From positions 1-64,000 of the IMG/VR virus record IMGVR_UViG_3300028608_000006: a stretch of DNA of 64,000 nt; one strand, written 5' to 3'. Shown piece after piece: positions 1 to 51,829 of the stretch (position 1 is its first letter; each line of letters begins with the position of its first letter). The notes below the pieces were generated by a model. The model was not told the DNA's origin, ran no database searches, and saw only the letters and a program-made list of their open reading frames with translations. The position numbers and the translations under genes were made by a program.

Positions 1-91
1 CAGAGGTAATAAGTAATACCGGAAACAGTTGTCATGTGTTTATCTCTTCAGTGTGGAAAATTTGGAACAACCTTAATTGGTTATCCCACAA

Positions 92-108
92 GTAATATAG
101 GGGTGAAA
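92..108 (-). promoter_or_regulatory. phiKZ-type early promoter (TTTCA-N3-CTATATTAC on minus strand), firing leftward out of the window
   Basis: Plus strand GTAATATAGGGGTGAAA = minus TTTCACCCCTATATTAC. The same motif recurs 5 more times; TATATTAC is the known early motif of phiKZ-like phages. Confidence 0.7.
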
Positions 109-570
109 TTCTCTTGCCCCCCCCCCCTTATCCCCCGACAAGGGTTGGTCTGCCTTTATAAAAGAAAAGGCCCTGCTGGTGCTCTTCAGAGCAACACACC
201 AGCAGGTATCCTCAATGGAGAGAATCAAACTCGTAGGAGAACCGATGAGCCACCCGAGGTACTAGCCAAAGAACCCCAAGCGGTTTGCCGGTATATGATT
301 AGTTCGCCCCAGTCGCAAAATAAATAGAAGCAAACATAAGCCCACACCGCCTGGACCCGGTTAAGGAATCCAGACGATATGGGTTATGAATGGGTGGAGT
401 TTTCTTATTGCTGTCCGAAGGTAAACAAACTGGGGGAACACTTCGAACACTACGACAGGTTGACTCCTCCCAATAACCTTGTCGCGAAACACTACACACG
501 ATGCGCCACTTAACGAGAGCTTCTTCAGAGCAAAACGTTACGAATGAAACATAACATAGTAACTCTTACT

Positions 571-6040: not shown

Positions 6041-9000
6041 CTAGGCTGCGCGCTTCAATTGCAGCATTCGCTTACTACGTTCAAACTTGGCCTGCTCCAG
6101 CAGACTATCGACTGTCATGAGGCGAGACTGTTCAGGCGGCAGTACTTTGCCGAGCTTCCGAATCTCTGCTTCCAGACGCATAGCCAAGATGTTGTCGTTG
6201 GTATTGAGCAACTCTTCAGTTAGCCCCTCCACCCGCGCTTTCACCTTGTCCAAGAATTGAACCACATGAGGCTCCATTGCAGGACCCTTCTTGTTCGAAC
6301 CCGTATCCAGCAGGTTCTTGGTATCCGTTAATGCAATCCCACCTTGGATACCATACAGGGACTTGTTAGCCCCCAACTTGATGAACCAGTACGTCAACAG
6401 CCAGCCGATTACCAAGTCATCGTGCTTCTTGGCATCGTGGTCGATTCGATCACCCTTAGTCCGCAGGTTGATCAACTCGTCCGCCAGCTTGTCGTAGTTC
6501 AGACCGTACGCTGTCATCCCCACCGCTTCCTGAATCAACCCGTAAAGAATCTCACGAGAACGGGAAGTGGTGTTGAACCCGAAGTACTGCTTAAACTTCA
6601 GGTAGAAGTTCTTCTGACGATAAGCGAACTTAACGTTTTGGATCTCCTTGAACTCTTTCTCGTACGTTACCGTGTCTTGGTAGACTTGGTTGAAGATGCG
6701 GGTGAATGGATCCATCCCTTTCGCCGGCAGCATAATCAACAGGTTGTCGATCATGTGGTGGGCGTAGTTGCGTTCAATCACCAGCAGGCTGTTGTTGAGG
6801 ACTTGCAGCAGGTCCACTATAATGGCTGTCACGTCGTCCAAGAAGGCCAATGGATAACGACCCACCCCAACTACCTTACCAGTACGCATGCTCCTGATAA
6901 TGATGGTACAGGCGTCCTTGTTGATAGCCGAGGACGTATCCACACCAATCAGGAAGTAGTCGTTGTACTCTTTCTTACCCATGTTGATGAGTTCTTGCTG
7001 GGTGCAGAAGAAGTCCATGAACAACCCGCTTTCCTTGTACTCCTTACTCCAGACCACCGCGCTCTTACAGTTGTTGATTGCTTCCCGCGTTACGTCATCA
7101 AACAGACGGTTCTCACCATCTTCCACCCACATCAACAACAAGTCGATCTTGGCCTTAGCAAGGCTGAGGTTGAGGGAGTCGATTGTCTCCTTCACCCAAT
7201 CCTTGTCTTTGCCCAACTGCATGTAGTTGTAAACCATGGCAATCGATGGACTGGTGGTAGACTTCGGCGAAGCACGCAGCAGACGTTCACGCAGATGACT
7301 CTCACTGAAGGAGTCAAAGAACTTCTCACGCCATTCAGTCGAGGACATCAGCTTCTCGAACATGAACTCGCCACTTGGGTGCAACGTTGTGTTCGGAGTC
7401 GTAATGAAACTGATTCCGTACGGTTTACCCTGTGTCCTGGCGTTGGCCATCGCGGTCAGTGCAGAAGGTGCACATCCGTTGATGATCTCTTCGATGAAAC
7501 TAATGTAAGCCGGTTCGTCGTAGGTTGTCGTTTCAACGGTAAGACCCCGTCCCAAGTCACCTGCTGCATCACGACCCATCTGAGGAACGTTAATGTTGAG
7601 CGTGTTGACATACTCATCACCAAAGGCCTTGTAGTTGAGGTAGTTACCTGAGTCCTTGTCTCGCCAGGTGGGGTTCACCAAGTAAGACGGCATACAGGTG
7701 CGGATCTTCTTGATGGCGTCAATGAACTGAGCCCGGTTATCCGACTTCAACGTAATGAGGTGAGACTTGTACCCTCGACCGTTGATGTAGGTCAGCCAGA
7801 AGTTGATGACCTGAACAGACACCGTGTTGTGCGTGACAATGAAGTCATCGGTGATGTACAGGTGTTCCTGGTTGTCCACTTCGATACAACTGGCCTCGTC
7901 GTCGCCACAGTACTCGATCTTGTCGACCCAGAGCCGGTTGTCCACTTCCGGACGCTTCTCTTTACGGAAACGGAAGTACTCCATCTCCTTAGGCAGCGTG
8001 ACCGTCAGGGTTTCCTTCTCTGGCTTGGCAGTGCCACCCAATCCCCTCACCAGGTAAGCCAACTGAGACGCTATAAGCGCGTTAGGCGCCTTTAAGGTCA
8101 AAGTCTTACCGATCTTCAGTCCTTCATCGAAAAACGCGTGTAGCAGCTTCAGGCGATCTTCCTGAGCCCCTTCAAGGTAGGACGATGGAAGCCCGACGTT
8201 TAAATCGAAGTCAAAAGGTTTTCCATCCCGACGTTTAATGATTCGGAACTTCTTGTCCTTGTCCATGGCCAGCGTCTGAGGAACCACAGACTCCAAGTAA
8301 GCGACTTGCTCCTTACTCAGGTTACGACCCCGCAACACACCATCGGTTAACTCAGAGTTGATCATGCAACCGATGAGGTAAGGGTCCAAGGTAAGACGTT
8401 GCGGTTTACCCTTCTCCGAACGAATCAACGGAAGCTCGAACGCATGCCCCTTCGCCATGGCGGTAAGCAGATCCGCTGTGGTGTAGTCGTCCGTAATACC
8501 CCGACGGCTCGCAGTACCCCGGGAAAAGTCCTTCAGGGTCCACAAGTGCTCAGCACCCACATCGGTGGAACGACCGTCGCTCATGGTCACCCGGTAAAGA
8601 CGCAACTTGCCCTGAGGGTGGATGCCAATCACGTTGGTGGTCTTACCAAAGCGGTCGATCAGCACATCACCAGTACGCAGGTCACCGATCTTCTTCCACG
8701 TATCAGCAGGGGTGATGTTACCCTGCTTCTCAACCTTGACTCGAACCTTGCTCGAGTTACGCTGCATCTTGCCTTGTTGGCGAGGCATGATCATGTACGT
8801 GGTGATGTGGTTGAGGTAGTTCCAGATGAAACTGATGTTACCCCGGTTCGCCATGAAGTTCTGATCAGGCTTTAACCGACAGACCTCACGCAGGAAGTAC
8901 CAGAAGTTAGTCCGGCACTCTTCGGCGATCATCAACTTCTGTTCGTTGGTGAGATCGTCAGCGTAAGGATCCACACCCTGCAACATGCGGTTGTTCAGCT

Positions 9001-9310
9001 GCAACAGGAAGTAGTAGTTCTTAATACCTTGTTGACGGAAGACTTCGGCGGTACGAATAAAGCTCGCATTACCGGTCTTCAAATCAGGTGCAGCTTTGTA
9101 ACGGTAGAAGTCTTTCAGGAAGCGCACGGTCTTGATGCTGTGCAGGCTGTCTTCCTCGAAGTGAGCCATCAAGGTCTCTTCTTCGGTGCGTGCATCGGAG
9201 TCCACACGGTTCTGCCGGTCGTCAATCAACTTCTTGGGTAGGTTCTGCGCACCCAAGTATGTTACCAGCTTCTTTGCAAACTCCAATGTCTTTTCATAAG
9301 CTTCAGACAT
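6041..9310 (-). CDS. terL: terminase large subunit (phiKZ gp25-like) with intein
   Basis: Walker A MPRQQGK|TVS after intein removal, Walker B-like TTYDEPAY, nuclease motifs IGVDTSS and HDDLVIG; next to the sheath/tube block. Confidence 0.9.
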   Translation of the reverse strand: MSEAYEKTLEFAKKLVTYLGAQNLPKKLIDDRQNRVDSDARTEEETLMAHFEEDSLHSIKTVRFLKDFYRYKAAPDLKTGNASFIRTAEVFRQQGIKNYYFLLQLNNRMLQGVDPYADDLTNEQKLMIAEECRTNFWYFLREVCRLKPDQNFMANRGNISFIWNYLNHITTYMIMPRQQGKMQRNSSKVRVKVEKQGNITPADTWKKIGDLRTGDVLIDRFGKTTNVIGIHPQGKLRLYRVTMSDGRSTDVGAEHLWTLKDFSRGTASRRGITDDYTTADLLTAMAKGHAFELPLIRSEKGKPQRLTLDPYLIGCMINSELTDGVLRGRNLSKEQVAYLESVVPQTLAMDKDKKFRIIKRRDGKPFDFDLNVGLPSSYLEGAQEDRLKLLHAFFDEGLKIGKTLTLKAPNALIASQLAYLVRGLGGTAKPEKETLTVTLPKEMEYFRFRKEKRPEVDNRLWVDKIEYCGDDEASCIEVDNQEHLYITDDFIVTHNTVSVQVINFWLTYINGRGYKSHLITLKSDNRAQFIDAIKKIRTCMPSYLVNPTWRDKDSGNYLNYKAFGDEYVNTLNINVPQMGRDAAGDLGRGLTVETTTYDEPAYISFIEEIINGCAPSALTAMANARTQGKPYGISFITTPNTTLHPSGEFMFEKLMSSTEWREKFFDSFSESHLRERLLRASPKSTTSPSIAMVYNYMQLGKDKDWVKETIDSLNLSLAKAKIDLLLMWVEDGENRLFDDVTREAINNCKSAVVWSKEYKESGLFMDFFCTQQELINMGKKEYNDYFLIGVDTSSAINKDACTIIIRSMRTGKVVGVGRYPLAFLDDVTAIIVDLLQVLNNSLLVIERNYAHHMIDNLLIMLPAKGMDPFTRIFNQVYQDTVTYEKEFKEIQNVKFAYRQKNFYLKFKQYFGFNTTSRSREILYGLIQEAVGMTAYGLNYDKLADELINLRTKGDRIDHDAKKHDDLVIGWLLTYWFIKLGANKSLYGIQGGIALTDTKNLLDTGSNKKGPAMEPHVVQFLDKVKARVEGLTEELLNTNDNILAMRLEAEIRKLGKVLPPEQSRLMTVDSLLEQAKFERSKRMLQLKRAA
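7826..8767 (-). mobile_element. intein (314 aa, class-3 WCT type, degenerate LAGLIDADG remnant) in terminase
   Basis: Begins MQRNSSKV after GK; block B GRSTDVGAEHLW, block F ASCIEVD, ends FIVTHN; +1 residue is Thr. Confidence 0.88.
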
Positions 9311-14865: not shown

Positions 14866-14968
14866 GGGGTGTCCTCGAAAATAACATGTTATGTGCCAGA
14901 TGTATACGCACTGTACGGCCCTATAGTGGGTTGCATACGATTGCTCCAGTACACTTACGAGGTTCTCC

Positions 14969-17140
14969 ATGACCATCTTTAACAAAATTGTTCCGGGGAA
15001 AGTTGTCAACCGGGGGATTAAGGATAACTCCGTCCCCGACTATGTCGTCAACTATCCTGTCTACCCGCTGCACGCGCCGGTCATCTCGATTGTCACTCCG
15101 AAAGGTGAACTGGCAAGCGAGAAAGGCACGCAGTGGATCTCTGTCAGCGACTTCACCGCGATGTTCGGCGATGTGATGGACTACAAGACTCCGTACTACA
15201 ACCCAACGTCTTTGCTGATCCAGCAATTGACTCGTGGTGGTCAGTCGGTGATCGGTATCCGTCGTCTGTCGGCGAACAACGAAGTGTCCCGCGTGGCCTT
15301 CTCCGCTTTCGTTCAACAGGTCCAAGTGCAGGATTACCAGCGTGACCTCGCCGGTAATTTCAAGCGCGACCCTGATACCGGTTTGAAAATTCCGAATGTC
15401 GGTGTCACCTACCCTGGCCTGAAAGTTGTCATCCGTCCGGACGACACTGCCAAAGCTAAAGGCTACGGCAAGTTGGTTCACCGCGTGATCCCGGGTACCC
15501 CTGCTGACGGTCAGACTCCTGCTGTTCCAGAAACCCTGGTTTACCCGCTGTTCGAGTTGGCTGCTGGTGTGGGCGATGCCTACAACGCCGGTGGTATCAA
15601 CATGGGTATCAACAACAATACCCTGAACTGGCGTTCGATCTCCGCCTTCGTTAAATCGACTGGCGTGTTCCCGTTCGACCTGCGTATGTTCACCGACTCG
15701 GCCACCGGTGTTCGCACCTACGCCAAGACCACTGACCGGAAAGAGACAGCAACCTTCACGCTGTTCCCAACCGAAGCTGGTGGTGAGCAGTTCAGCGTTA
15801 AGCGCGCTGTCGGTGCCTTCACCGGTACCAACGTCAACCGCAAGATCGTCCCGATCCCTCAGCCGTTCAAAGACGCCCACGTCTACGCGGATGACATCGA
15901 CACGCTTTGCCAACTGATGTACATGGTTGAGAAAGACGTGAACGAAAGCCTGGTTGAAGTGGGTGCTCGTCCATACCAGCAGATGAACCCGTTCACCGCT
16001 ACCAACCACGTTGGTGCTCCGTACTTCGCCATCCAGACCGACGACGCCACTCTGTGGGATCTCAGCGGTGCTGTGAAAGCGGCTTACGGCGTGAACCCGT
16101 TCTACCTGGCCAACGGCGACATGCCTGCTGGCGTGACCCCAGTTGTTCCGAACGACCCGTTCGGTCTGCTGGCCGACACCAAGTTCCCAATGACCACTGG
16201 TCAGGCATGGGAAGTGACCAACAGCTTGATGGCTGCGGATCTGACGACTTACGTCAACGGTTCCGAGATCAAGAACTACACCCGTAACCGCCAGTCGGTT
16301 TTCTGGGACGTTGGTTACACCAAAGAAGTTAAAGACATCGCTGCTCAGTTGCTCGGTCAGCGTAAAGACGTCTTCTTCTTCGGTGACGCAACTGTTTGGG
16401 AACCAGGCACCCCGAACGACCTGGGTACTGTCTACTCCCGCATGGCATCGCTCGTGGCTTCGCTGCGCCTGACGCCGGAATCGGAACAGTGGGGTACTCC
16501 GACTGTGCGTGCGTCGATCAACCTGATCGAAGCGAAACTGATCAACGAAGTGACCGGTGGCTACTTCTCCGGCAACCTCGACCTGGCTTACGCGTTCGCG
16601 CTGTTCGCCGGCAACAACAGCGGTATCATCACTGCTTCGGCTTCGCCGGACCACGGTGACAACCGTATCCTCCGCACCATGCACTCTCCGAACATCGAGT
16701 TCGAAGAAGACGACGTGGCCAACGACAACTTCGAGAACGGCGCGATCACTCTGCGTCCGTACGACGTTGAACAACTGTATCGCCCAGCTCTGATCACCGT
16801 TTTCAACAACGTTGACTCCGTGCTGAAAGATGCGGTGACCGCGTTCCTCTGCGTGTGCATGGAGAAGATCCTGCAAGACGAATGGAACACCGTCTGCGGT
16901 GACACCTCGATCTCGGCCGCCAGCTACGCTGCGCTCGTGAAAGACGGTGCCGAACGTAAGTGCCGTGACCGCCTTGGCGGGCTGGTGAAGAACATCACCG
17001 TTCTGACTTCCTACGACGAAACCCGTCCTGGTGGTCGTGCTGTGATGAACGCCATCGTGAATGGCTACTTCAACAAGGGCAAGTACATGATGAACCTGGA
17101 TCTGTTCGCCTACAACGAACAAGATGCAGCCACTGCTTAA
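14969..17140 (+). CDS. contractile tail sheath protein (phiKZ gp29-like)
   Basis: 723 aa, extreme codon bias; motifs P.YP.H.P, YTRNRQSVFWDVGY and LTPES..WGTP..RA; followed by the tube gene. Confidence 0.85.
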   Translation: MTIFNKIVPGKVVNRGIKDNSVPDYVVNYPVYPLHAPVISIVTPKGELASEKGTQWISVSDFTAMFGDVMDYKTPYYNPTSLLIQQLTRGGQSVIGIRRLSANNEVSRVAFSAFVQQVQVQDYQRDLAGNFKRDPDTGLKIPNVGVTYPGLKVVIRPDDTAKAKGYGKLVHRVIPGTPADGQTPAVPETLVYPLFELAAGVGDAYNAGGINMGINNNTLNWRSISAFVKSTGVFPFDLRMFTDSATGVRTYAKTTDRKETATFTLFPTEAGGEQFSVKRAVGAFTGTNVNRKIVPIPQPFKDAHVYADDIDTLCQLMYMVEKDVNESLVEVGARPYQQMNPFTATNHVGAPYFAIQTDDATLWDLSGAVKAAYGVNPFYLANGDMPAGVTPVVPNDPFGLLADTKFPMTTGQAWEVTNSLMAADLTTYVNGSEIKNYTRNRQSVFWDVGYTKEVKDIAAQLLGQRKDVFFFGDATVWEPGTPNDLGTVYSRMASLVASLRLTPESEQWGTPTVRASINLIEAKLINEVTGGYFSGNLDLAYAFALFAGNNSGIITASASPDHGDNRILRTMHSPNIEFEEDDVANDNFENGAITLRPYDVEQLYRPALITVFNNVDSVLKDAVTAFLCVCMEKILQDEWNTVCGDTSISAASYAALVKDGAERKCRDRLGGLVKNITVLTSYDETRPGGRAVMNAIVNGYFNKGKYMMNLDLFAYNEQDAATA

Positions 17141-17150
17141 GGAGTAATTC

Positions 17151-18101
17151 ATGGCTACCACCCCAATTCCGGGCACCTCCGCTGGCGGTTCTTCGCCGGC
17201 AACGAACTACCCGCACCGCGACGCGAACACACTGCTGCCAGAGAGTGATGCCTTCGTCCAGGCGCTGGACCTCGCCAAACGTCCTGTCATCAACGCCGAA
17301 TCCGGTGGCATGTACGGTTGGGCAGGTAACGTCTTCGAGTACATCAGTGCTCAGCCTCACGTTTCGCAACAGAGCTGGTGCATCATGCTCAGCACGCCGA
17401 TGATGTTCTCCCGCCTCCCAGGTGGCGATCGTCTGCACGCACTGTGCAAAGCGTTCTTCGAGAACCGCTCGCAGTCCTTCGAAGGTCTGCAAGATCGTAC
17501 CGAACACGCCTTCGGGCGTATGGAATGGACTGGCCACGTCATGTCCATCCCTACCGGCGCGACTCGTACCCTGGGTAGCGTGACTCATACCGTGATCGAC
17601 GTAGAAGGTGAATCTTTCACCAAGCTGCTGAAGATCTGGGGTCAGTGGGGCGTGATGGATCCAGAAATCATGAACGCCAAACTCGTGATCCTCGACGAGC
17701 CAGGTGACATGCTGCTGGACGAAGTGTCGGCTGCGGCTTGCTACTTCGAACCAACTCGCAACATGCGTGACATTGCTCACGCCGCGATCGTTGTTGGTAT
17801 GATGCCTAACGGCACTGTGCCAATCGAGTTGAAGCGCAACAAGGCCGAAGAGAACACCATCCGCACCATTCAGATGGAGTTCACCGGTGTTGTTGAATTC
17901 GACACCCTGGCAGTGAAGCAAATCGCTCGCGAAATGCTGGCACTCCTGCCGCTGTACAACCCGGACGCTATCGACGCGCCTGAGGGCTTCAAGTCTCGCA
18001 CCTCGACTCTGGAAGCGCTGACCAACGCCGGTACCATCGAGCGTATGACCACGCAGAAAGAATCCGTGAGCGAAACTGCTTCTGGCCAGTACATGGGCTA
18101 A
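17151..18101 (+). CDS. tail tube / major tail protein (phiKZ gp30-like)
   Basis: 316 aa directly after the sheath, AAGGAG RBS; YFEPT..MRDI.HA.....MMP motif typical of this family. Confidence 0.75.
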   Translation: MATTPIPGTSAGGSSPATNYPHRDANTLLPESDAFVQALDLAKRPVINAESGGMYGWAGNVFEYISAQPHVSQQSWCIMLSTPMMFSRLPGGDRLHALCKAFFENRSQSFEGLQDRTEHAFGRMEWTGHVMSIPTGATRTLGSVTHTVIDVEGESFTKLLKIWGQWGVMDPEIMNAKLVILDEPGDMLLDEVSAAACYFEPTRNMRDIAHAAIVVGMMPNGTVPIELKRNKAEENTIRTIQMEFTGVVEFDTLAVKQIAREMLALLPLYNPDAIDAPEGFKSRTSTLEALTNAGTIERMTTQKESVSETASGQYMG

Positions 18102-18120: not shown

Positions 18121-18159
18121 CCCCTACCCCACGCCCCTTATGGAGGCGTGGGGTAGGGG
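18121..18159. terminator. bidirectional hairpin between convergent genes
   Basis: CCCCTACCCCACGCC...GGCGTGGGGTAGGGG, 15-bp stem. Confidence 0.8.
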
Positions 18160-19430: not shown

Positions 19431-19874
19431 TTAATCAACTTCGGTCATATTTTCAAACAGTTCGTAGTCGTCAAACTTTGAACGCATCGACTTGGGGTCG
19501 CAGTTCTCGTAAGACTTCTCAACACCACCAGACATGATTTGCAGGTAACCGGTTTTCGATCCCTGCTTGTCCATGAAGCCAATGTTGTAGAACTTATCTC
19601 CGTCCGTAACATACATCTCACGGCTCAGAGAACCTTCTTCCTTGGACATCCGACCGGAGGTGCCGAGGTTGTTGGAACGTTTCATGATGGTCACATCCGG
19701 TATATCCAGATTCTGGCCGTAGCTGAATGTGAACACATCAGTACCTGGGTTGTGCTCGACCAACACATGTTCCCCTTTAGGCAGGTCACATACGAAGACC
19801 ACTTCATTACTTGCTGCGTGTGCGGTACCCAGCATCAACGACACCAGTACGAACAGACCTGTTACATATTTCAT
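19431..19874 (-). CDS. predicted secreted/periplasmic protein
   Basis: Sec signal MKYVTGLFVLVSLMLGTAHA with an A-H-A cleavage site; two Cys in the mature part. Confidence 0.7.
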   Translation of the reverse strand: MKYVTGLFVLVSLMLGTAHAASNEVVFVCDLPKGEHVLVEHNPGTDVFTFSYGQNLDIPDVTIMKRSNNLGTSGRMSKEEGSLSREMYVTDGDKFYNIGFMDKQGSKTGYLQIMSGGVEKSYENCDPKSMRSKFDDYELFENMTEVD

Positions 19875-20233
19875 GCGTTAACTCCTTGTGGGATGCGTAG
19901 ATCCTTTCTTATTTGAAAGGTGGTTTTATTTACGAACTGTTGGAATTCCGGAATGCCTTCTTGTGCCACGCGAGCTGCGAGTGCATCAGCAAACAGAACG
20001 AAAGCCTTCAGGATATCGCTATCCCGAAACCACGCGTTGTCGAAGATGAGGAACTGATTCACCACAGGGCAAATAGTTCCAACCGTCTTGTCACCGCGGT
20101 GGATCAGAATGGTTGGAACCGCCGTTGTGAAACTCCAACCCTCGTGTTTAAAACTTACACTGAACCCACGTTTAGCTTGGGTGTTTACTTCCGTTGCCAA
20201 GGACATCAGGCAAGCGTGATGTGGTGCGAACAT
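19871..20233 (-). CDS. hypothetical protein (120 aa)
   Basis: AAGGAGG RBS; ATGA overlap with the downstream gene. Confidence 0.65.
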   Translation of the reverse strand: MFAPHHACLMSLATEVNTQAKRGFSVSFKHEGWSFTTAVPTILIHRGDKTVGTICPVVNQFLIFDNAWFRDSDILKAFVLFADALAARVAQEGIPEFQQFVNKTTFQIRKDLRIPQGVNA

Positions 20234-20575: not shown

Positions 20576-20619
20576 GATTAATCTCCTGATTAGTTAAACT
20601 GCCTTTGATCCCAAAGGCA

Positions 20620-20673
20620 TTTGTATTGCTTACTAACCGGGTAATATAGGTCTGAGATCGAATGTAAGTTAAA
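20620..20673 (-). promoter_or_regulatory. early promoter cassette copy A (TATATTAC core at 20641-20648)
   Basis: 42/54 ungapped identity to 22238..22291. Confidence 0.75.
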
Positions 20674-20700
20674 TTCCGACAAAACAAATAAACCGTGTAA

Positions 20701-20731
20701 TAACCTCCTACCCGTAATGGGTAGGAGGTTA
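20701..20731. terminator. hairpin terminator
   Basis: TAACCTCCTACCC-gtaat-GGGTAGGAGGTTA, perfect 13-bp stem. Confidence 0.8.
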
Positions 20732-20741
20732 TACGGCTTAC

Positions 20742-21284
20742 TTAGTAGTGCGCGGTTGATTGGTGAGGAGGGCGATGCGCGTTACTGAACAGTTCCGCCT
20801 CTTCAGCCTTTTCCATTGCACGAGTCTTCACCCGACGATGGACAGCCATCACACGTTCCAGCCGGGCCATGTGGTTGCCGATGTTGTGCGAAGAGTTGTG
20901 CTGGCTTACTACCCGAGTCAGCACTTCCAACGTTACCAGATCACCGGCCGCAGCACCGATGAAGAAGTCGAGGGATTCCGGTGCGATCACATCGAGACTG
21001 AATGGACCGTGACCCAGCGGATACATCTCAGTGACGGCCACAACACCTACGCGCGTACCGACCATGATGATGCGACGCCCATCCTCGGCCTGCGACTTAC
21101 ACACTTCACCGATCTCCATCGGGTGATGGATGATGGCGAAGATGTATTTATCACCTTCGTCTTCCACAACCCAGTCTTCACTGAATGGAGTGAAGTCCAG
21201 AATCTTGGTGAGGGTGTTAGTGAATGCATCTTGCAGCTGGCGTTCGTTGAAAGCTTGTTGCTGTACTGCGGTCAAATCGTTCAT
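20742..21284 (-). CDS. hypothetical protein (180 aa)
   Basis: Clean ORF ending just before the hairpin. Confidence 0.65.
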   Translation of the reverse strand: MNDLTAVQQQAFNERQLQDAFTNTLTKILDFTPFSEDWVVEDEGDKYIFAIIHHPMEIGEVCKSQAEDGRRIIMVGTRVGVVAVTEMYPLGHGPFSLDVIAPESLDFFIGAAAGDLVTLEVLTRVVSQHNSSHNIGNHMARLERVMAVHRRVKTRAMEKAEEAELFSNAHRPPHQSTAHY

Positions 21285-21326
21285 GCCGTCAAATCCTGTA
21301 CAAGAGTGTAAGAGTGTTAGGGAGGA

Positions 21327-21713
21327 TTAGAACTTTACAACATTGGTCAGTTGACCGCTGCTGAATGGGAAACCTGCTTGCTCGGCGTTGTATTGCTCAA
21401 CGCCGTCTTCTACTGGAGCACCGTGCAGCTCGATGGTGCCGCCTACCGAATTGGTAGACAGGTGAACACCACCACGGGTATCCATGTAAACCGAGTTCAA
21501 GCAGAAGTAACGCGCATCGATCAGGGCAACAACAGTTTGCTTGTCGCCTTTCTCGATGGTGGCCAGACCCCACAGCTGCATGGTCTTGCCGGCGCCGTGG
21601 TCATCGGCGACCAAACCATTAACAGCTTCAGCCGCCGCATAGATCAACGCATTACCTACTTTCAGGTTAGGGTTGGTAGCAACAGATACAACAGCAACGT
21701 TTGCATTAGTCAT
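21327..21713 (-). CDS. hypothetical protein (128 aa)
   Basis: AAGGA RBS, operonic. Confidence 0.65.
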   Translation of the reverse strand: MTNANVAVVSVATNPNLKVGNALIYAAAEAVNGLVADDHGAGKTMQLWGLATIEKGDKQTVVALIDARYFCLNSVYMDTRGGVHLSTNSVGGTIELHGAPVEDGVEQYNAEQAGFPFSSGQLTNVVKF

Positions 21714-21751
21714 GATTCAATTCCTTGTATTTCAGGGTAGGTAGTTTGTTA

Positions 21752-22072
21752 TCAGTTTGTAGCGTCGTCTAACGCTTTGGTCAGACGTTCGATCACTTTG
21801 TTAACATCGGCGGTTTCGTAGATAACGAATAGCCCGCCCGGAGCGATGTCGCTATCAGCCCATGGATTGTCCGTTTCGAGGGGAAAGGAATTTCCAGTGA
21901 TACCCATGTCGATATCGAACAGTTCCTCATGCCCAGCGCCAGATGCATCGGAAAGATGCTGGACCGTGGCACCAGGACCCTTGATAAGCATTTCGTACAG
22001 ACCCAGTGGATACCGGGTAAACACTGTGCCCTCTGGGAGGGATTGCAGTACATCCATACCAACTACTTTCAT
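21752..22072 (-). CDS. hypothetical protein (106 aa)
   Basis: AAGGA RBS, operonic. Confidence 0.6.
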   Translation of the reverse strand: MKVVGMDVLQSLPEGTVFTRYPLGLYEMLIKGPGATVQHLSDASGAGHEELFDIDMGITGNSFPLETDNPWADSDIAPGGLFVIYETADVNKVIERLTKALDDATN

Positions 22073-22085
22073 GTTCGGTTCCTTG

Positions 22086-22223
22086 TTAGCGGGAAGTCAA
22101 TGCGTTGCTAATACCGTTAGAGATGTATTGCGAACTCGTCCCGGCGTCAGTACCGGAGCAAGCTGCACAAATCCCAACGATAGCAATAACGAGACCGATG
22201 AGTGTAAGTGCTTTCATTTGCAT
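22086..22223 (-). CDS. small predicted lipoprotein/membrane peptide (45 aa), not in ORF track
   Basis: My translation MQMKALTLIGLVIAIVGICAACSGTDAGTSSQYISNGISNALTSR; TAGGAG RBS; first gene after an early promoter. Confidence 0.6.
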   Translation of the reverse strand: MQMKALTLIGLVIAIVGICAACSGTDAGTSSQYISNGISNALTSR

Positions 22224-22237
22224 GCTCCTAAAAGTTA

Positions 22238-22291
22238 TTTGTATTACTTACTGAAATGGTAATATAGACTTGAAACTTAATGTAAGTTAAA
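22238..22291 (-). promoter_or_regulatory. early promoter cassette copy B (TATATTAC core at 22259-22266)
   Basis: Minus strand TTTCAAGTCTATATTAC; near-duplicate of 20620..20673. Confidence 0.75.
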
Positions 22292-22313
22292 AAGAAAGAA
22301 AGCAAACATAACC

Positions 22314-22345
22314 CTATCCCCAGCACCCGAAGGCACTGGGGATAG
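22314..22345. terminator. hairpin terminator
   Basis: CTATCCCCAG...CTGGGGATAG. Confidence 0.7.
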
Positions 22346-27902: not shown

Positions 27903-27919
27903 GTAATATAGGTGTGAAA
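27903..27919 (-). promoter_or_regulatory. early promoter
   Basis: Minus strand TTTCACACCTATATTAC. Confidence 0.75.
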
Positions 27920-33296: not shown

Positions 33297-36200
33297 TTAC
33301 TTACCTCGATAGATGGCGATGGCTTGTTTAGTGACCGCGATGGTGAGTTCGCAACTGACCAGCTTGTTACGGAAACTCAACACCATTCGGTTAAACATAC
33401 CTTTAAGACTGGTTTTGATCAGAACTTCACGACCATCTTCGGTCATCAGGGGCTTGTGCATGATGCGACCCACTGTGCCTTTCATCTGGTTCGCGATAAC
33501 GTATTTGTCCGCGTTGGTACTTGGATCCATGGACTCCACCAAGATGGTGACGAACGCTTTACCAGGCGACAGAATCGGCTTGTTAACGTTCAAGCTGTTA
33601 GACACAGCTCCCTTTACAACATCGGACCCTTCAATCTCTGCGGTTCTCTTGCGGGCTTTGTCCTGAGAGGTGATGAACTTCTTCACCGTCTCCGACATAT
33701 CTTCGGGTGCAGAGTTATACACCACGTCGATTTTGATGACCTTGCCGTGATGCTTGGAACGAACTTGCCGGATACCCAGTTTGTTCATTTCCGTGGCGAG
33801 ACTAACTTCAGCAACATCGCCCACCAAGTGAGCGTCTTCAACGTTGCATAAAATCGAGTCATAGTCAACAGAATCGCCCACTTTAACTTCGAGGCTGATG
33901 TTCTGTACCACGTCGATCGCGAAACGCATACCTTTGATGTACGGAGTAACACCTTCCATAGCCAGTTCTTTCGCAATGGCGATGGAGTCTTCGTACACGT
34001 CCTGGTCTTCCACCATGGCAATCCGCACCATGCGCCCTGCTTTCCAAGCCACTTGACCTGGGCAGAAAGCGTCTCGAGCAAACCACTGCTCATCCCAACC
34101 AATCACATCACCCTTATTAAAGCTATCGCCAACCTTGAGGTCAGTGATCCGGGTATGTCGATGGTATTCACCTGCTGCCTCACCGATAGCCAACCCGAGA
34201 GGGTAGACGTCAGTGGTGCCGTCCTTATACGTCACTCTGAGAGCGTCCTCAGTGACTTCTGTGACCTTGCCAGCGTCAGTAGCTACCTTGCTGTACAGAT
34301 CGGACGTACGGTGCGCTACGACGTTCTCGTAGCCGGTACGGAGGATGTTCGGCGTGTAGTTCATTGCACTGACCGCCTGACTCGCTTGAGTCGAGGTAAA
34401 GGTCGAACGTTTCGGGTCATCGTGACCCACGCCGTACTGCAAGTTACCCGTAACCGATACCAAACCCGAGTTGGACGGTTTCTCACCCAGAGCGATGTTA
34501 CCCCGGAAGTCTTTGATGCTAGGGTCAGAGGTCAGGTAGGTTACGAAGCCTACTTTACCGCTGTCCTTGTTCGCCTCCGAGATCTTGCCCTTGTAAGTGT
34601 CCAGCTGCTGACGAGCGCGTTTCACCATGGTGATCTCACTACGACCACCCACACCGCCGAAGGTTACTTCTTCCTGATCCTTCAACTGGTGAATCGGGTT
34701 CACCTCTTCCACCAAGTTCACCGAGGTATCGGTAATGATGTTGAGGATAACCGCTTCAGGGTTGATGTCGATGGTGTGCTTGCGCTCTTTGCCTTTGTTC
34801 CGGTACATGCGAATGGCTTTCACCAATTCCCGGTACACATGACCCGCAAACCGCTCGTAACCCACGATGCGTTGTTCTTCAATCTCTACTTCATGACGCG
34901 AGTAGTCCGTCTCCAGCAACTTCACAGCGTCGATCAGCAGATAGTGGAAGGACGTCGCATAACCCAACTTCGCCAGCTCTTCCTTGGTCACCGGGTCGAT
35001 GAACAGGTCGAACAGGTTCTTCATTTCCTTGAACTGCTGAGGCTTAACCTTTGGATCGCCCATCAATGGAACCCAGATACCTTTCTCGTTGAGATCGGTG
35101 CGACTGAAGTTACTGATGTTGTTCAGCTTCGGCATACCACCGAAGATCAGGCTGGCCAGTTTCTCACGACGGTTGAAGATCAGGTACTCGTCGTTGAAAG
35201 CAATAGCGTACTCATCTTCACTGAGCTTAGGACGGGTGCCCATTGGAACAGTGCGAGTGGTCGCCTTGGTAACTTGGATCAGCTTGTCGATACCGAAGTA
35301 GTAGCAGAGCACCACACCAATCGGGAAGTGATACCCGCTGATGTTGATGACCGCGTACTCGATAGGCGCCTTGGCCAAAGACACACCGCACAGACCCTCT
35401 AGGGTGCCCATCTCGGTGTCGCCGTGGTAAAGGTTACCGTAACTGTCAATCCACAGCGGCTTGCCCGCCTTAACGCCCACCAGGAAGCACTCCTTCTTGG
35501 TGTACTTCAAGCGGTAATCAGGATACTTCTCCAGCAACTCGTCAATACGGAAGTCGAGAGTAACGTCGCCAACAGTAATGAACGTGAACTTCTTCGCCAG
35601 AATGCTGTAGATCCGTGGGGAGATGTAGTCAGGGTTGTAACCCGAACCTTGGCTGTAAGTCAGGAAGGCAGCCTCACCTTCTTTCTTCATGCCACGGGTA
35701 CGGATCTGTTTCACCAGCCACAGACCGTAGTCGTCCACCACCTTCTGGCTACGCAGCACCATGAGCTTGCGGTCATAGTAGCTGGTCAGAGCAACCTTGA
35801 AAGCGTTGATCTTGCGGATCGGCAGTTCCATGCGTTGCAGTTGCATGTGTTGCTTCACACCGTCAACAGTGAAAGACCCATCCTTCTGCACTTTAGGCAA
35901 ACGGATCTGGTGGGTACTTTGAGCGCCGTCTACAGGGTGAAGCTGAATGCGCAGTACGTCGTAGGCACCTTCAACACCGGAAATCGATTCGGTCTTGTAG
36001 TCAGCTACCGCAACACCGGCGTTCTGCACACCCACTACCATCTTGGCAATGTCTTTGTGCAGGAAGCGCTGAGCGTACTCTTGTTTCAATACAGCGGAGC
36101 GGCTACGGAGCATGCTCTCGTCAAGCACGGTGATGAAGTTACCTTCGATCTTGCCGTCCAACGAGTTGATCTCTTCTTGAGAGATGTGCATGTATTCGCC

Positions 36201-37613
36201 CAGTGTCTGACCGTTCTCCATTTCAATGTGCTGGAAGGCAGTGCCCTTGCGCATGAAGAAGTTTTGTTCAGAGACTGTCAGAACGCCATCACGAGCACGT
36301 TCTTCCAAAGCCGCACGGATGCCAGACTCAGGGGTAGGGAACGCATCCTTGTTGGTCGAGATCTCCACCGAAGTGGTTTCAACGTCCAACAGGGAGTCAT
36401 CTACGTTACTTGTCCAATCCCCAGCAGCTTCATCAGCTGTATGTTCTGCCGCATCTCCTTGCCCTTCCACCAGTGCGCCGTTATGTCCCGCGTCACTGCT
36501 GAAAACATCAAGGATGCTACTATCAGCAGAATGATCATCCACAGGCGCATCTTTGCCAGCAGGCGAGGTTGCTTCTCCGTTACCGGATGCTCGTCCTTGC
36601 CCTTTCGCAGCTCCCGCCTTTCCTTGAGCCACTGAAGCGTCGTTTTCCGCTCCACCGGATCCGTTGGCTCCTGTTCCATCTTTCTTCTCCTCGTCGGTAA
36701 TATCCTTTTCACTTACCGAACCACGGGACAAGTTCATCAACGCCAAGTAGAAACGCTTGGTTACGTTGAGACGCTTGGGAGAAACTGCTTCAGTCTTGTC
36801 CTTCGTGTTCAGCTCGTCAAGCCAGGACTTGATCGTTTTAACGTTGATGATCAATGCCTTGCTGTTCGAAGTAAAGATGAAGTGCAGGTCGTCTTCCGCC
36901 TGAGGGCTCAACTTACCGAACAAACTGTACTCGTACTGTCCCTGTAGGAAAGCCAACAGATCCAGCAACCAGTATGTCCCCTCGGCTTTAGTTACCCGAA
37001 GAGATTGGTTACTAGGAACTGGAAGACCTTCTTTAAAGCTTCCGATATACTTTTCATAATCGACCATCAACTCTTTGTAAGAGGGAACGTTGATCGGGAG
37101 TTCCATTCGCAGGAACTGTTTACGGGTCTGTGTGCGGGCTGCCTCCTCATTCGCACCCTCAACCAACATGTTCAGCCGGTTGTAATGGATTTCGAAGTTA
37201 ACGAAGGTCGCTGCACGTTGAGCCCAGGTTTTGTCCGCAATGCCGTAGTTCTTCACAACCAGCACATCGTTTCGGCGATACACCGTGTTGATGTCTTTGG
37301 TCCAGTTGTAGTTGTAGTGGCTGGCGCGATACGCTTGAATCGCTTTCTTGATGTCGAACGCCAACACACGACCATGCCCCAACACCGGAGTGAAACGAGG
37401 CACGAACTCAACGAACACGTCTTCTGGGAAGTTAGAGATAAACGCTTCCGACACAGAAGGACCGTACTCACTCGCCAGCTTCGGTACAAAGTGCACCAAG
37501 GCTTGCTTCGGCATGACAATCTCGCTCACGCCGATAAAGTTGGGCTCTATGAGCTCCTGTTTCTTCCGTTGTACAAACAGCTTGAAAAACTCACTGTACG
37601 TAAGAAGCCGCAT
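33297..37613 (-). CDS. virion RNA polymerase beta subunit, large fragment (phiKZ gp178-like)
   Basis: 1438 aa; HDDPKR...QASQ, NVVAHRT, EDSI and DKYVIANQMKGTV beta-type motifs. Confidence 0.88.
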   Translation of the reverse strand: MRLLTYSEFFKLFVQRKKQELIEPNFIGVSEIVMPKQALVHFVPKLASEYGPSVSEAFISNFPEDVFVEFVPRFTPVLGHGRVLAFDIKKAIQAYRASHYNYNWTKDINTVYRRNDVLVVKNYGIADKTWAQRAATFVNFEIHYNRLNMLVEGANEEAARTQTRKQFLRMELPINVPSYKELMVDYEKYIGSFKEGLPVPSNQSLRVTKAEGTYWLLDLLAFLQGQYEYSLFGKLSPQAEDDLHFIFTSNSKALIINVKTIKSWLDELNTKDKTEAVSPKRLNVTKRFYLALMNLSRGSVSEKDITDEEKKDGTGANGSGGAENDASVAQGKAGAAKGQGRASGNGEATSPAGKDAPVDDHSADSSILDVFSSDAGHNGALVEGQGDAAEHTADEAAGDWTSNVDDSLLDVETTSVEISTNKDAFPTPESGIRAALEERARDGVLTVSEQNFFMRKGTAFQHIEMENGQTLGEYMHISQEEINSLDGKIEGNFITVLDESMLRSRSAVLKQEYAQRFLHKDIAKMVVGVQNAGVAVADYKTESISGVEGAYDVLRIQLHPVDGAQSTHQIRLPKVQKDGSFTVDGVKQHMQLQRMELPIRKINAFKVALTSYYDRKLMVLRSQKVVDDYGLWLVKQIRTRGMKKEGEAAFLTYSQGSGYNPDYISPRIYSILAKKFTFITVGDVTLDFRIDELLEKYPDYRLKYTKKECFLVGVKAGKPLWIDSYGNLYHGDTEMGTLEGLCGVSLAKAPIEYAVINISGYHFPIGVVLCYYFGIDKLIQVTKATTRTVPMGTRPKLSEDEYAIAFNDEYLIFNRREKLASLIFGGMPKLNNISNFSRTDLNEKGIWVPLMGDPKVKPQQFKEMKNLFDLFIDPVTKEELAKLGYATSFHYLLIDAVKLLETDYSRHEVEIEEQRIVGYERFAGHVYRELVKAIRMYRNKGKERKHTIDINPEAVILNIITDTSVNLVEEVNPIHQLKDQEEVTFGGVGGRSEITMVKRARQQLDTYKGKISEANKDSGKVGFVTYLTSDPSIKDFRGNIALGEKPSNSGLVSVTGNLQYGVGHDDPKRSTFTSTQASQAVSAMNYTPNILRTGYENVVAHRTSDLYSKVATDAGKVTEVTEDALRVTYKDGTTDVYPLGLAIGEAAGEYHRHTRITDLKVGDSFNKGDVIGWDEQWFARDAFCPGQVAWKAGRMVRIAMVEDQDVYEDSIAIAKELAMEGVTPYIKGMRFAIDVVQNISLEVKVGDSVDYDSILCNVEDAHLVGDVAEVSLATEMNKLGIRQVRSKHHGKVIKIDVVYNSAPEDMSETVKKFITSQDKARKRTAEIEGSDVVKGAVSNSLNVNKPILSPGKAFVTILVESMDPSTNADKYVIANQMKGTVGRIMHKPLMTEDGREVLIKTSLKGMFNRMVLSFRNKLVSCELTIAVTKQAIAIYRGK

Positions 37614-37615
37614 TG

Positions 37616-39232
37616 TTACTCCTCAAGACCACTCGTAGCGGCCTTCAACATAAACAGAATCGGTTCGTTGACAGGGTCATAAAGGAAACGACCGCTGCCA
37701 CTGATGTAGTACTCGCGCTTGCCGAACAGATCCCGAACTTCGGACTTACTGTCTTCGGCGTTCACGCTGTTGCTGTTCAACTGGTCACCGTCGTGGTCGG
37801 AGTCATAGCCCGCTTCACGAGAAGGGTCAACCGACATGGCATCGAAGTAGTCAGGGGTTTCCGTCCGGTGCGGGTAACGGGAACAGGTTTCCATTACTTC
37901 CCAATCAGGGGTGCGAATGGTCCGAGGCTTAGCCCCAGTGATCGTCACCAAGTTCACCTTGGCAGGAACGATAGAACCGATACCAATGATCGGGTAACGT
38001 GTCTGCTGGGTGATCTGATCCATGACTGTGGCTTGACACGACAGGTAGAACAGCTCCATGTACGTGATTGGACGAACCAGTTTACGGTCCTTATCCTTGG
38101 GGAGATCGTTGATGTCATGCAGCACACAAACGTCCTCACCATCGTCATAGACTAGGGCGAGGTAGTGTTTTTCAACGATGATCTCCTTGTTCCGCAGATG
38201 CACGTTGGAGAAGCCGTTGAAGAGTTTGTTCAACCCAGTAAAGGTCGACCACTTCTCAACCACATACGGTGGCACTTCGACGTACTCGTATTCGAGGGTC
38301 TTGGTGTTCACCAGCTTCACGGTCTGCGAACCAGGAGTAAAGATGTTCTGCAAGTACTTGCTCAGAAGAGCGTGCACACAGACGTACTGGTTGTTCAGCA
38401 GCGCTTGATACAGACCGATGTCCGTGGAGTTAGGGTTAACCCCGTTGGTCTTGAACAAGTCTGCCCGAGAGACCTTACGCGCAGTAATAACGTTACGGGT
38501 ACCCGACACCACACCACGAGTAGACAAACGCTTCTGGAACAAACCCCCTTTACCTTCAGTCAAACCGAAGAGGTATTGGTCGATGTCGTTGAAGGCACTT
38601 TGCAGGGACCAACGCACGTTGTCGTACAGTGGGTTCTCCGCATCCCGTTGACTACCCAAACTGATGACTCGAGTCTTGAAGATCAGCTTCCTATATAGGT
38701 CGGTGATCTCGGGCTCAGTCGGAGCACCGCTCGGTTGGAACTGAATGTCCCGCAGACCCGCCGGAATCACCAACACTTTATTGCTGACGGCGATGTCACG
38801 GAACTGAGTGACCAACTTCACCCGCTGCTTACGTTTGTAGGAATCCGTCGTAGCAGGAACGATTTCGTGGAAGTGACGCATAAAGAAAGCAAAACCCGTC
38901 TCCCCGTCGAGGAGGTTGGATTTTATGAAATCTTTAGCCACAGGATCCCATACCGCGTATTCCGTTCCTTTCAGAATACTGAGGTACAAGGATTTTATTT
39001 GCGTCAGTGCTTTGAAGTAAGTTGGGTTGAAGAGCCCGAGCTTTGTGTCAATGTACGCTTCAGTTCTATCGCGCTCTTTGCTACCCAGCTTGCCGAAAAT
39101 CTCTAGGGAATAAAGACCCTCGTCATTCAAGTTCTGGGTCATCCCTTCAAAGGCGTCCGTGGACGTTACTTCTTTGAAGACGCCCGGCAGAATAGTCTTT
39201 GGATCTAACAACTTAAGGTTTGTGGGCTTCAT
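37616..39232 (-). CDS. virion RNA polymerase beta-prime catalytic fragment (phiKZ gp180-like)
   Basis: GLYSLEIFG, VIPAGLRD and catalytic DSDHDGD (DxDGD) motifs. Confidence 0.88.
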   Translation of the reverse strand: MKPTNLKLLDPKTILPGVFKEVTSTDAFEGMTQNLNDEGLYSLEIFGKLGSKERDRTEAYIDTKLGLFNPTYFKALTQIKSLYLSILKGTEYAVWDPVAKDFIKSNLLDGETGFAFFMRHFHEIVPATTDSYKRKQRVKLVTQFRDIAVSNKVLVIPAGLRDIQFQPSGAPTEPEITDLYRKLIFKTRVISLGSQRDAENPLYDNVRWSLQSAFNDIDQYLFGLTEGKGGLFQKRLSTRGVVSGTRNVITARKVSRADLFKTNGVNPNSTDIGLYQALLNNQYVCVHALLSKYLQNIFTPGSQTVKLVNTKTLEYEYVEVPPYVVEKWSTFTGLNKLFNGFSNVHLRNKEIIVEKHYLALVYDDGEDVCVLHDINDLPKDKDRKLVRPITYMELFYLSCQATVMDQITQQTRYPIIGIGSIVPAKVNLVTITGAKPRTIRTPDWEVMETCSRYPHRTETPDYFDAMSVDPSREAGYDSDHDGDQLNSNSVNAEDSKSEVRDLFGKREYYISGSGRFLYDPVNEPILFMLKAATSGLEE

Positions 39233-51812: not shown

Positions 51813-51829
51813 GTAATATAGGTTTGAAA
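51813..51829 (-). promoter_or_regulatory. early promoter
   Basis: Minus strand TTTCAAACCTATATTAC. Confidence 0.75.

What the first reader, a model, noticed from the sequence alone, without database searches (positions are those of the whole stretch)
20620..22345. Duplicated 54-bp early-promoter cassette plus hairpin bracketing an accessory gene module
20620-20673 and 22238-22291 align without gaps at 42/54 positions: TTTGTATTRCTTACT-N6-GTAATATAG-N11-AATGTAAGTTAAA. The match extends well beyond the TATATTAC core on both sides, and each copy is preceded on the minus strand by a hairpin terminator. The four genes between them form a self-contained terminator-promoter-genes unit. This is analogous to T4-type promoter-early stem-loop cassettes that shuffle accessory genes by recombination. 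The extra 13-mer and 15-mer could also be regulator sites defining a promoter subclass.
Basis: partly seen in the sequence, partly recalled or inferred. Interest (0 to 1): 0.6.

Follow-up and report, generated by a model that had tools for sequence, protein, structure and literature searches.

The report
Jumbo-phage early promoter subclass, not duplication
The two look-alike 54-bp stretches are two members of a dispersed family of phage-polymerase early promoters with a shared leader, each following a terminator hairpin in a phiKZ-like jumbo phage, so they mark two neighbouring early operons rather than a fresh duplication, and proof that they move genes around is lacking.

Summary
In detail: 20620-20673 and 22238-22291 match at 42/54 positions without gaps. 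Both lie on the minus strand behind strong hairpins, and four minus-strand ORFs lie between them.

The pair is not special. The window is the first 64 kb of a 231.8-kb phiKZ-like jumbo phage contig from a metagenome. Its TATATTAC-type sites are all but one on the minus strand and fall into two classes.
- Class II, which includes both copies, adds a 13-mer (TTTAACTTACAKT) upstream and a 15-16-mer (AGTAAGYAATACAAA) 6 nt after the core.
- Class II has 7 clear copies in this genome and 22 across four related genomes.
- Copies A and B each resemble a third copy, at 67.9 kb, more than they resemble each other.

The best reading is a subclass of virion-RNA-polymerase early promoters with a conserved transcribed leader. 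These sit at terminator/promoter operon boundaries.

The T4 PeSL-like shuffling idea is only partly supported.
- For: gene content here is mosaic among about 10 relatives, copy A is present or absent as a unit, and class II sites lie in indel-rich DNA (P about 0.003).
- Against: only 2 of 42 indels touch a cassette (P 0.22), and no module is gained or lost between cassettes.

Transcription starts and timing are inferred, not measured.

The parts
22314..22345 (-). Terminator hairpin (14-bp stem, 4-nt loop) with a T-rich tail, ending the upstream unit (dTMP kinase, 203-aa and 57-aa genes)
   Evidence: -26.9 kcal/mol; the tail matches the genome-wide terminator motif GGTTATGTTTG
22238..22291 (-). 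Class II early promoter, copy B: 13-mer 22279-22291, -20 box TTTCA, core TATATTAC 22259-22266, leader 15-mer 22238-22252
   Evidence: orthologous copies in G002, G003 and other relatives
22086..22223 (-). Small ORF of 45 aa (likely 43 aa from the second ATG at 22217) with a signal-peptide-like N-terminus and a Cys; putative small lipoprotein or membrane protein; present or absent among relatives
   Evidence: no family hit
21752..22072 (-). 106-aa accessory ORF. Absent from the nearest relatives G003 and G002, present in L089 and L090, and fused to the 128-aa domain in L081
   Evidence: weak phrog_11827 hit
21327..21713 (-). 128-aa ORF, the conserved domain of this module. Its own leader and RBS (CCTACCCTGA...ACAAGGA) are the distal half of the full class II leader
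   Evidence: its fold matches only uncharacterised jumbo-phage proteins
20742..21284 (-). 180-aa ORF, function unknown, last gene of the unit
   Evidence: no fold match
20694..20740 (-). Terminator hairpin (perfect 14-bp core within a longer stem) with a T-rich tail, ending the four-gene unit
   Evidence: -37.8 kcal/mol, z -8.1; conserved in G003, G002 and L081
20620..20673 (-). Class II early promoter, copy A: 13-mer 20661-20673, core 20641-20648, leader 15-mer 20620-20634. The terminator plus promoter is missing as a unit in several relatives
20600..20619 (-). Small hairpin inside the 5' leader of the 109-aa gene, seen only in this genome
20246..20575 (-). 109-aa ORF, first gene behind copy A and the most conserved gene of the region (67-95% identity in relatives)
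19871..20233 (-). 120-aa accessory ORF, an indel with no cassette at either end (present in L081, L089, L090; absent in G003, G002, L086)
27903..27911 (-). Example of a class I (plain) early promoter core in the window. Others are at 92-100, 1537-1545 and 51813-51821. They lack the 13-mer and the leader 15-mer
33297..39232 (-). Two phiKZ-type multisubunit RNA polymerase subunit genes (1438 aa and 538 aa), which establish the kind of phage
   Evidence: phrog_3148, phrog_2986

Best explanation
The two 54-bp stretches are two members of a dispersed subclass ('class II') of early promoters of a phiKZ-like jumbo phage. Such promoters are read by the multisubunit RNA polymerase that the virion injects. 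With the TATATTAC core centred near -10, the layout is as follows. The 13-mer TTTAACTTACAKT lies at about -39 to -27. A TTTCA box lies near -20. The 15-16-mer AGTAAGYAATACAAA(T) starts at about +1, so it is the conserved 5' end of the transcripts. In its full form this leader runs on through CCTACCCTGA and an ACAAGGA ribosome site to the start codon. Each promoter stands directly behind an intrinsic terminator belonging to a separate, genome-wide terminator family. The region is therefore two consecutive early operons: copy B drives the 45/106/128/180-aa genes, then a terminator, then copy A drives the 109/120/147/268/145-aa genes. Shown here: the motif family, its strand and spacing rules, its positional conservation in relatives, the hairpins, and the phage type. 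Inferred: recognition by the virion polymerase, the start site, early timing, and any role for the arms (promoter strength or selectivity for the 13-mer; translation or stability for the leader).
For: The phage type is phiKZ-like. It encodes RNAP beta-type subunits. Relatives carry phiKZ_gp29PR and PhiKZ_VTX Pfam domains. The nearest isolate by protein is Pseudomonas phage Noxifer. TATATTAC is the published phiKZ early-promoter motif (PMC7058600). Early promoters of these phages are centred near -10 (PMC7598289) and conserved at -10, -20 and -30 (PMC11512511). Of the CTAYATWAY sites, 21 of 22 are on the minus strand. There are 7 class II copies here and 22 in four genomes, all on the transcribed strand and in one register. 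The 13-mer never occurs without the core. The first genes behind class II copies are not paralogous within a genome but are orthologous between genomes, so the sites are held in place. Of the 42 positions shared by A and B, 26 are at least 80% conserved across the family, against 1 of the 12 that differ. The hairpins are strong and belong to a terminator family found on both strands across the whole genome. Noxifer shows the same hairpin-then-promoter layout without the arms.
Against: Start site, timing and the polymerase responsible are therefore inferred from other phages. The leader 15-mer is weak or absent in the more distant relatives G001 and L092, so it may not be essential. The shared leader-plus-RBS in front of unrelated genes is longer than polymerase contacts alone would require. 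That points to copying of whole cassettes at some time.
Confidence: 0.72

Rival explanations
1. PeSL-like mobile regulatory cassettes. On this view, terminator, class II promoter and leader are copied to new sites as a unit. Recombination between copies then inserts, deletes or swaps the accessory genes between them, possibly through excised circles, as in T4-type phages. This is compatible with the promoter function.
For: The composite terminator-plus-early-promoter layout resembles PeSLs (PMC2839356). Copy A, with its terminator (about 140 bp in all), is present in G000, G003, G002/L077 and L081. It is cleanly absent in L083/84, L086, L089, L090 and G001, where the two flanking genes abut. 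G003 has an extra class II copy that is missing here. The same promoter, leader and RBS precede unrelated genes. Class II sites lie in indel-rich DNA: 2.86 against 1.07 indels within 3 kb, P 0.003. Gene content of the module is mosaic among relatives, and the 128-aa homologue sits behind a different class II copy in G001.
Against: Only 2 of 42 indels of 150 bp or more between G000 and G003 touch a class II cassette (random expectation 0.88, P 0.22). The 45/106-aa insert lies inside the leader, has a short direct repeat at its edges in G002, and has no cassette at its far end. The 120-aa indel has no cassette at either end. No relative has lost or gained the whole module between A and B. Orthologous copies keep their own spacers, so there is no sign of recent conversion between A and B. 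The terminators are an independent genome-wide family.
Confidence: 0.2
2. The arms are control sites layered on an ordinary early promoter. One possibility is an operator for a phage protein that switches this subset off or on. The other is a second, later-phase promoter upstream, giving early plus middle expression as reported for phiKZ gene 54.
For: The arms define a discrete subset of early promoters. The two arms share an inverted TTAC/GTAA element flanking the core. phiKZ gene 54 has an early and a middle promoter in tandem (PMC8244752).
Against: The inverted element shows no compensating changes: a C-to-G change in the 13-mer at 116.3 and 155.7 kb leaves the other arm unchanged. The 13-mer never stands alone in front of any gene. 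The described phiKZ middle motif (A-rich run plus TACT at -22) does not match.
Confidence: 0.15
3. Hybrid promoters also read by the host sigma-70 polymerase, with TTAACT as the -35 box, an 18-bp spacer and TATATT as the -10 box.
For: The consensus scan flags exactly this pair of hexamers in both copies, at 9 of 12 matches.
Against: The count of such hits in the region is not above that in shuffles. Two class II copies read TTAAGT. Conservation is strongest in the TTACAKT part, outside the putative -35 box. phiKZ infection does not depend on the host polymerase (PMC4666361 abstract).
Confidence: 0.05
4. A recent local duplication of one 54-bp segment that happens to bracket four genes.
For: 42/54 identity at a spacing of 1.6 kb.
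Against: Both copies are closer to the copy at 67.9 kb, and B is closest to its orthologues in other genomes. Both positions are already occupied in G002, G003 and L081, with their own distinctive spacers.
Confidence: 0.02

Closest known systems
phiKZ-type early promoters read by the virion RNA polymerase (phiKZ, 201phi2-1, EL, OBP, N1M2)
   Same: The core TATATTAC is identical. A T-rich or TTTCA box lies near -20, and there is conservation reaching to about -30. The sites are intergenic, co-oriented with small genes of unknown function, and the phage encodes split multisubunit RNAP subunits.
   Different: Two discrete classes coexist in one genome. Class II has a sharply defined 13-mer at about -39 to -27 and a conserved transcribed leader of 16 to about 45 nt that can include the ribosome site. 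Neither arm is present in the nearest isolate, Noxifer. Pattern scans of IMG/VR found the arms in only three other contigs.
T4-type PeSLs (promoter-early stem-loop cassettes; Arbiol et al. 2010, Comeau et al. 2014)
   Same: The element is a composite of a terminator stem-loop and a strong early promoter, ending at the Shine-Dalgarno sequence and start codon of an ORFan. Many dispersed copies are concentrated in variable regions.
   Different: The promoter is for a phage polymerase, not sigma-70. There are far fewer copies (7 against about 50). Indel junctions are not enriched at the cassettes. Circles could not be tested.
Conserved terminator motifs of phiKZ and 201phi2-1 (Putzeys et al.; PMC11512511)
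   Same: A sequence-conserved G+C-rich hairpin followed by a fixed tail (here ...GGTTAT GTTTGC) recurs on both strands across the genome, including upstream of copy B.
   Different: The stem sequence here is specific to this clade. Termination activity has not been measured.

Membership tests
phiKZ-type virion-RNAP early promoter | AT-rich core TATATTAC or a close variant | tested here: met
   Exact TATATTAC in both copies. There are 12 exact sites genome-wide, all on the minus strand; the motif is as published.
phiKZ-type virion-RNAP early promoter | Further conservation near -20 and -30 | tested here: met
   A TTTCA box and the 13-mer sit in fixed register in 22 copies; see PMC11512511.
phiKZ-type virion-RNAP early promoter | Phage encodes phiKZ-like multisubunit RNA polymerases | tested here: met
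   phrog_3148 (E = 0) and phrog_2986 (E = 9e-207) at 33297-39232.
phiKZ-type virion-RNAP early promoter | Core centred about 10 nt upstream of a mapped primary 5' end, active within minutes of infection | not testable with these tools
T4-type PeSL mobile regulatory cassette | Composite of terminator stem-loop and strong early promoter between genes | tested here: met
   Hairpins directly upstream of 4 of the 7 class II copies, including both copies of the finding.
T4-type PeSL mobile regulatory cassette | Sigma-70-type promoter | tested here: inconclusive
   TTAACT-18-TATATT scores 9/12, but the conservation pattern fits the phiKZ motif better.
T4-type PeSL mobile regulatory cassette | Copies concentrated in hyperplastic regions in front of ORFans | tested here: met
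   2.86 against 1.07 indels within 3 kb of class II sites, P 0.003. Downstream genes have no known families, apart from one GNAT acetyltransferase.
T4-type PeSL mobile regulatory cassette | Indel and replacement junctions between close relatives coincide with the cassettes | tested here: not met
   2 of 42 indels touch a class II copy (random 0.88, P 0.22). The junctions next to copy B lie inside the leader, with no distal cassette. Copy A itself is a presence/absence unit.
T4-type PeSL mobile regulatory cassette | Excised mini-circles formed by recombination between neighbouring cassettes | not testable with these tools
   No reads were available.
Intrinsic (factor-independent) terminator | Stable G+C-rich hairpin followed by a T-rich tract on the transcribed strand | tested here: met
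   -37.8 and -26.9 kcal/mol, each with a T-rich tail. For copy A's hairpin the T tract starts about 10 nt after the stem.

The most novel reading that the evidence does not exclude
Terminator, class II promoter and leader/RBS form a PeSL-like mobile expression cassette in a jumbo phage that uses its own polymerase. It is copied to new intergenic sites, as copy A appears to have been, and it seeds gain, loss and exchange of early accessory genes. This would extend the T4 'mobile regulatory cassette' principle to a promoter type that is not sigma-70. A related open reading is that the shared 5' leader tags a subset of early mRNAs for preferential translation or handling.
Probability: 0.2. Interest if true: 0.6.

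Novelty: new variant of a known kind. Interest (0 to 1): 0.35.

Why it matters
Early transcription of phiKZ-like nucleus-forming phages runs on an injected polymerase, and what that polymerase recognises in a promoter is still poorly defined. This uncultivated clade has two sharply separated promoter classes sharing one core. That gives a natural contrast for asking what the upstream 13-mer and the transcribed leader add, such as strength, timing or translation. It also gives compact parts (terminator, promoter, leader) for phage engineering. The link between class II sites and indel-rich DNA, and the presence or absence of copy A as a unit, make the mobile-cassette idea testable outside the T4 group. 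As it stands, however, the finding is mostly an ordinary operon boundary of a known promoter type.

Tried and rejected
- DNA searches of GenBank phages found no DNA-level relatives (megablast and blastn). Relatives came only from protein or pattern searches.
No read mapping, start-site evidence or circle evidence was therefore possible, and read laying was not used.
- An inverted repeat between the two arms, as a DNA or RNA structure or a dimer site, was rejected. There is no compensating change where the 13-mer varies.
- The 13-mer as an independent promoter was rejected, because no stand-alone copies exist.
- Recent duplication or conversion between A and B was rejected on the identity matrix.
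- A single gain of copy A could not be shown. A four-protein tree does not make the genomes that carry it a clade: it needs 3 changes, although one origin is not excluded. The region looks mosaic.
- Rfam has no family at the cassettes.
- The function of the module proteins remains unknown. There are no Pfam or PHROG functions. The AlphaFold models are confident (pLDDT 87 and 85), but the PDB gives no informative match. The 128-aa fold matches only uncharacterised jumbo-phage proteins.
- No alternative genetic code was used.

Full report
**Observation**

The two stretches align without gaps at 42 of 54 positions. A pattern made of the 13-mer, an 11-nt spacer and CTATATTAC occurs exactly twice in the window, with none in 100 shuffles. 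All genes here run on the minus strand. Read on that strand, each copy has these parts, given as copy A then copy B:
- TTTAACTTACATT at 20661-20673 and 22279-22291
- an 11-nt spacer ending in a TTTCA-like box, then C
- the core TATATTAC at 20641-20648 and 22259-22266
- six variable bases
- AGTAAGYAATACAAA at 20620-34 and 22238-52

Each copy follows a strong hairpin with a T-rich tail (-37.8 and -26.9 kcal/mol). Four ORFs of 45, 106, 128 and 180 aa lie between the copies.

**What genome this is**

The window is the first 64 kb of a 231,788-bp metagenome contig with 51.9% G+C. It encodes phiKZ-type multisubunit RNA polymerase subunits at 33297-39232. Relatives carry phiKZ tail sheath and tail tube domains. 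The nearest isolate by protein is Pseudomonas phage Noxifer, followed by the Ralstonia RSL2/RSF1 phages. No GenBank phage matches at the DNA level.

TATATTAC is the published phiKZ early-promoter motif (PMC7058600). In these phages the conserved AT-rich element is centred near -10 of early transcripts made by the injected virion polymerase (PMC7598289). There is further conservation at -20 and -30 (PMC11512511; PMC8244752).

**The pair belongs to a family**

Sites matching CTAYATWAY number 22 in the genome, and 21 are on the minus strand. They fall into two classes.
- Class I has an AT-rich run, TTTCAAAC and the core, and nothing more. Examples in the window are at 92-100, 1537-1545, 27903-27911 and 51813-51821.
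- Class II adds both arms seen in the finding. It has seven clear copies, with 13-mers starting at 20673, 22291, 67921, 102061, 103607, 116354 and 155679, plus a degenerate one near 71.75 kb.

Three related IMG/VR genomes also carry class II copies, all on the transcribed strand and in one register: G003 (233 kb, collinear, about 80% identity), G002 (133-kb fragment) and G001 (220 kb). Together with this genome that makes 22 copies. The 13-mer never occurs without the core. Noxifer has the hairpin-then-promoter layout but neither arm. Pattern scans of IMG/VR found the arms only in this small clade.

**The pair is not a fresh duplication**

A and B share 42/54 positions. A shares 46/54 and B shares 47/54 with the copy at 67.9 kb. 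B shares 50 and 48 with its positional orthologues in G002 and G003. Of the 42 shared positions, 26 are at least 80% conserved in the whole family, against 1 of the 12 that differ. Orthologous copies keep their own spacer sequences. The first genes behind class II copies are unrelated within a genome but orthologous between genomes. The similarity therefore reflects constraint on a shared regulatory motif held at fixed places.

**Likely mechanism**

Placing the core at -14 to -7 puts the 13-mer at about -39 to -27 and the TTTCA box near -20. The A of AGTAAG then falls at about +1. The 15-mer would therefore be the conserved 5' end of the transcripts. This is inferred, not measured.

In several copies the similarity continues through AACTTT, CCTACCCTGA and an ACAAGGA ribosome site to the ATG. 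The string ACAAGGA-N-TTGA occurs five times in the genome, all on the minus strand. Three are at first genes behind class II copies and one is at the 128-aa gene.

The hairpins belong to a separate terminator family with a fixed tail, GGTTAT GTTTGC. It occurs about 25 times on both strands across the genome, much as reported for phiKZ and 201phi2-1. The region is thus two consecutive early operons:
- Copy B drives the 45, 106, 128 and 180-aa genes, ending at a terminator.
- Copy A drives the 109, 120, 147, 268 and 145-aa genes, ending against the convergent late tail genes near 18.1 kb.

**The shuffling hypothesis**

Homologues of the 109-aa protein gave about ten distinct relatives with flanks. 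Gene content is clearly mosaic.

| Gene or domain | Present in | Absent from, or other notes |
|---|---|---|
| Small putative lipoprotein (45 aa) | G000, G002, L081, L086, L089, L090 | G003, L083/84, G001, L092 |
| 106-aa gene | G000, L089, L090; fused to the 128-aa domain in L081 | G003, G002, L086, L083/84 |
| 120-aa gene | G000, L081, L089, L090 | G003, G002, L086, L083/84 |
| 128-aa domain | every relative with module flanks except L092 | N-terminal extensions vary; tandem paralogues in L083/84; sits behind a different class II copy in G001 |

A class II promoter at the B position is present in all relatives. Copy A with its terminator, about 140 bp in all, is present only in G000, G003, G002/L077 and L081. 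Elsewhere the two flanking genes abut with a 25-35-nt spacer, and L092 has only a terminator. A four-protein tree does not resolve whether this was one gain.

Genome-wide, G000 and G003 differ by 42 indels of 150 bp or more. Only two touch a class II copy (random expectation 0.88, P 0.22). Class II copies nevertheless sit in indel-rich neighbourhoods, with 2.86 against 1.07 indels within 3 kb (P 0.003). Class I copies do not.

The insert next to copy B lies inside the leader, between AACTTT and CCTACCCTGA. In G002 it has a short direct repeat at its edges, and it has no cassette at its far end. No relative has gained or lost the A-to-B module as a unit.

Overall, the architecture and location resemble T4 PeSLs (PMC2839356; PMC4122927), and cassettes do come and go.

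**Other readings**

- The inverted TTAC/GTAA element between the arms shows no compensating changes.
- A sigma-70 reading (TTAACT-18-TATATT, 9/12) is flagged by the scan. It does not explain the conservation pattern, and phiKZ-type infection does not need the host polymerase.
- A control-site reading or a dual early/middle promoter reading remains possible.

**The module proteins**

None has a Pfam or PHROG function. The 128-aa and 180-aa proteins fold confidently (pLDDT 87 and 85) but have no informative PDB match. The 128-aa fold matches only uncharacterised proteins of other jumbo phages. The 45-aa product looks like a small signal-peptide or lipoprotein-type protein. Its likely start is the second ATG, at 22217.

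**Verdict**

This is a real, non-random feature. It is a new variant (a subclass with a conserved leader) of a known kind of element, the phiKZ-type early promoter at a terminator/promoter operon boundary. The PeSL-like mobility reading is open but unproven.

Noticed in passing
window 1-130 and genome end 231660-231788: The contig's last roughly 129 bases repeat its first bases, so the assembly closes on itself. The two copies differ in the length of a poly-C/G run (10 against 11) that sits right next to the class I promoter at 92-100.
   Followed up: partly
whole genome, e.g. window 5994/6030, 49564, 61168; G000 93437, 130604, 143716, 185911, 191947: There is a sequence-conserved terminator family: a hairpin with stem ...CCCTACCC / GGGTAGGG... 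followed by GGTTAT GTTTGC. It occurs about 25 times on both strands, independent of the early promoters. Some copies sit between convergent genes and read as hairpins on both strands.
   Followed up: partly
window 6041-9310 (-): This 1089-aa ORF has an N-terminal part that matches terminase large subunit profiles, but it is far longer than usual. Residues of about 200-340 also hit DnaC-like loader and primase profiles, and Pfam gives nothing. It may be an inserted element or a split or extended terminase.
   Followed up: partly
window 39262-47301 (+): Giant 2679-aa ORF with a glycoside hydrolase 19 (lysozyme/chitinase-type) segment near residues 2180-2231. It is reminiscent of the large phiKZ tail lysin / tape-measure-like protein.
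   Followed up: partly
window 14921-17176 (-) versus 14969-17140 (+): Two long overlapping ORFs lie on opposite strands. Relatives show that the real gene is the plus-strand one (phiKZ gp29-type tail sheath), followed by a tail tube gene at 17151-18101 (+). The minus-strand 751-aa ORF is a shadow.
   Followed up: yes
L081:3198-4256, L077:3503-4198, L083:4167-4966: The 128-aa domain is modular. It is fused behind a 106-aa-like domain in L081 (352 aa). It carries other N-terminal extensions in G002, L086 and L089 (189-231 aa). It is tandemly duplicated in L083/84, where it replaces the 180-aa gene.
   Followed up: partly
window 20600-20619: A small hairpin has been inserted in the 5' leader of the 109-aa gene in this genome only. 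G003 and G002 lack it.
   Followed up: no
G003:213019 (L033) versus G000 67420-67468: G003 has an extra class II promoter between the first and second genes behind the 67.9-kb copy's orthologue. G000 has only a 49-bp spacer there. This is a second case of a cassette present or absent without a change in the flanking genes.
   Followed up: partly
window 18121-18159: A hairpin between the convergent early (minus) and late tail (plus) genes gives weak, below-threshold Rfam hits (sbcD RNA) on both strands. It is most likely a bidirectional terminator.
   Followed up: no
G000 102057-102575 (L068:4057-4575, -): A GNAT-family acetyltransferase is the only early gene behind a class II promoter with a recognisable family.
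   Followed up: no
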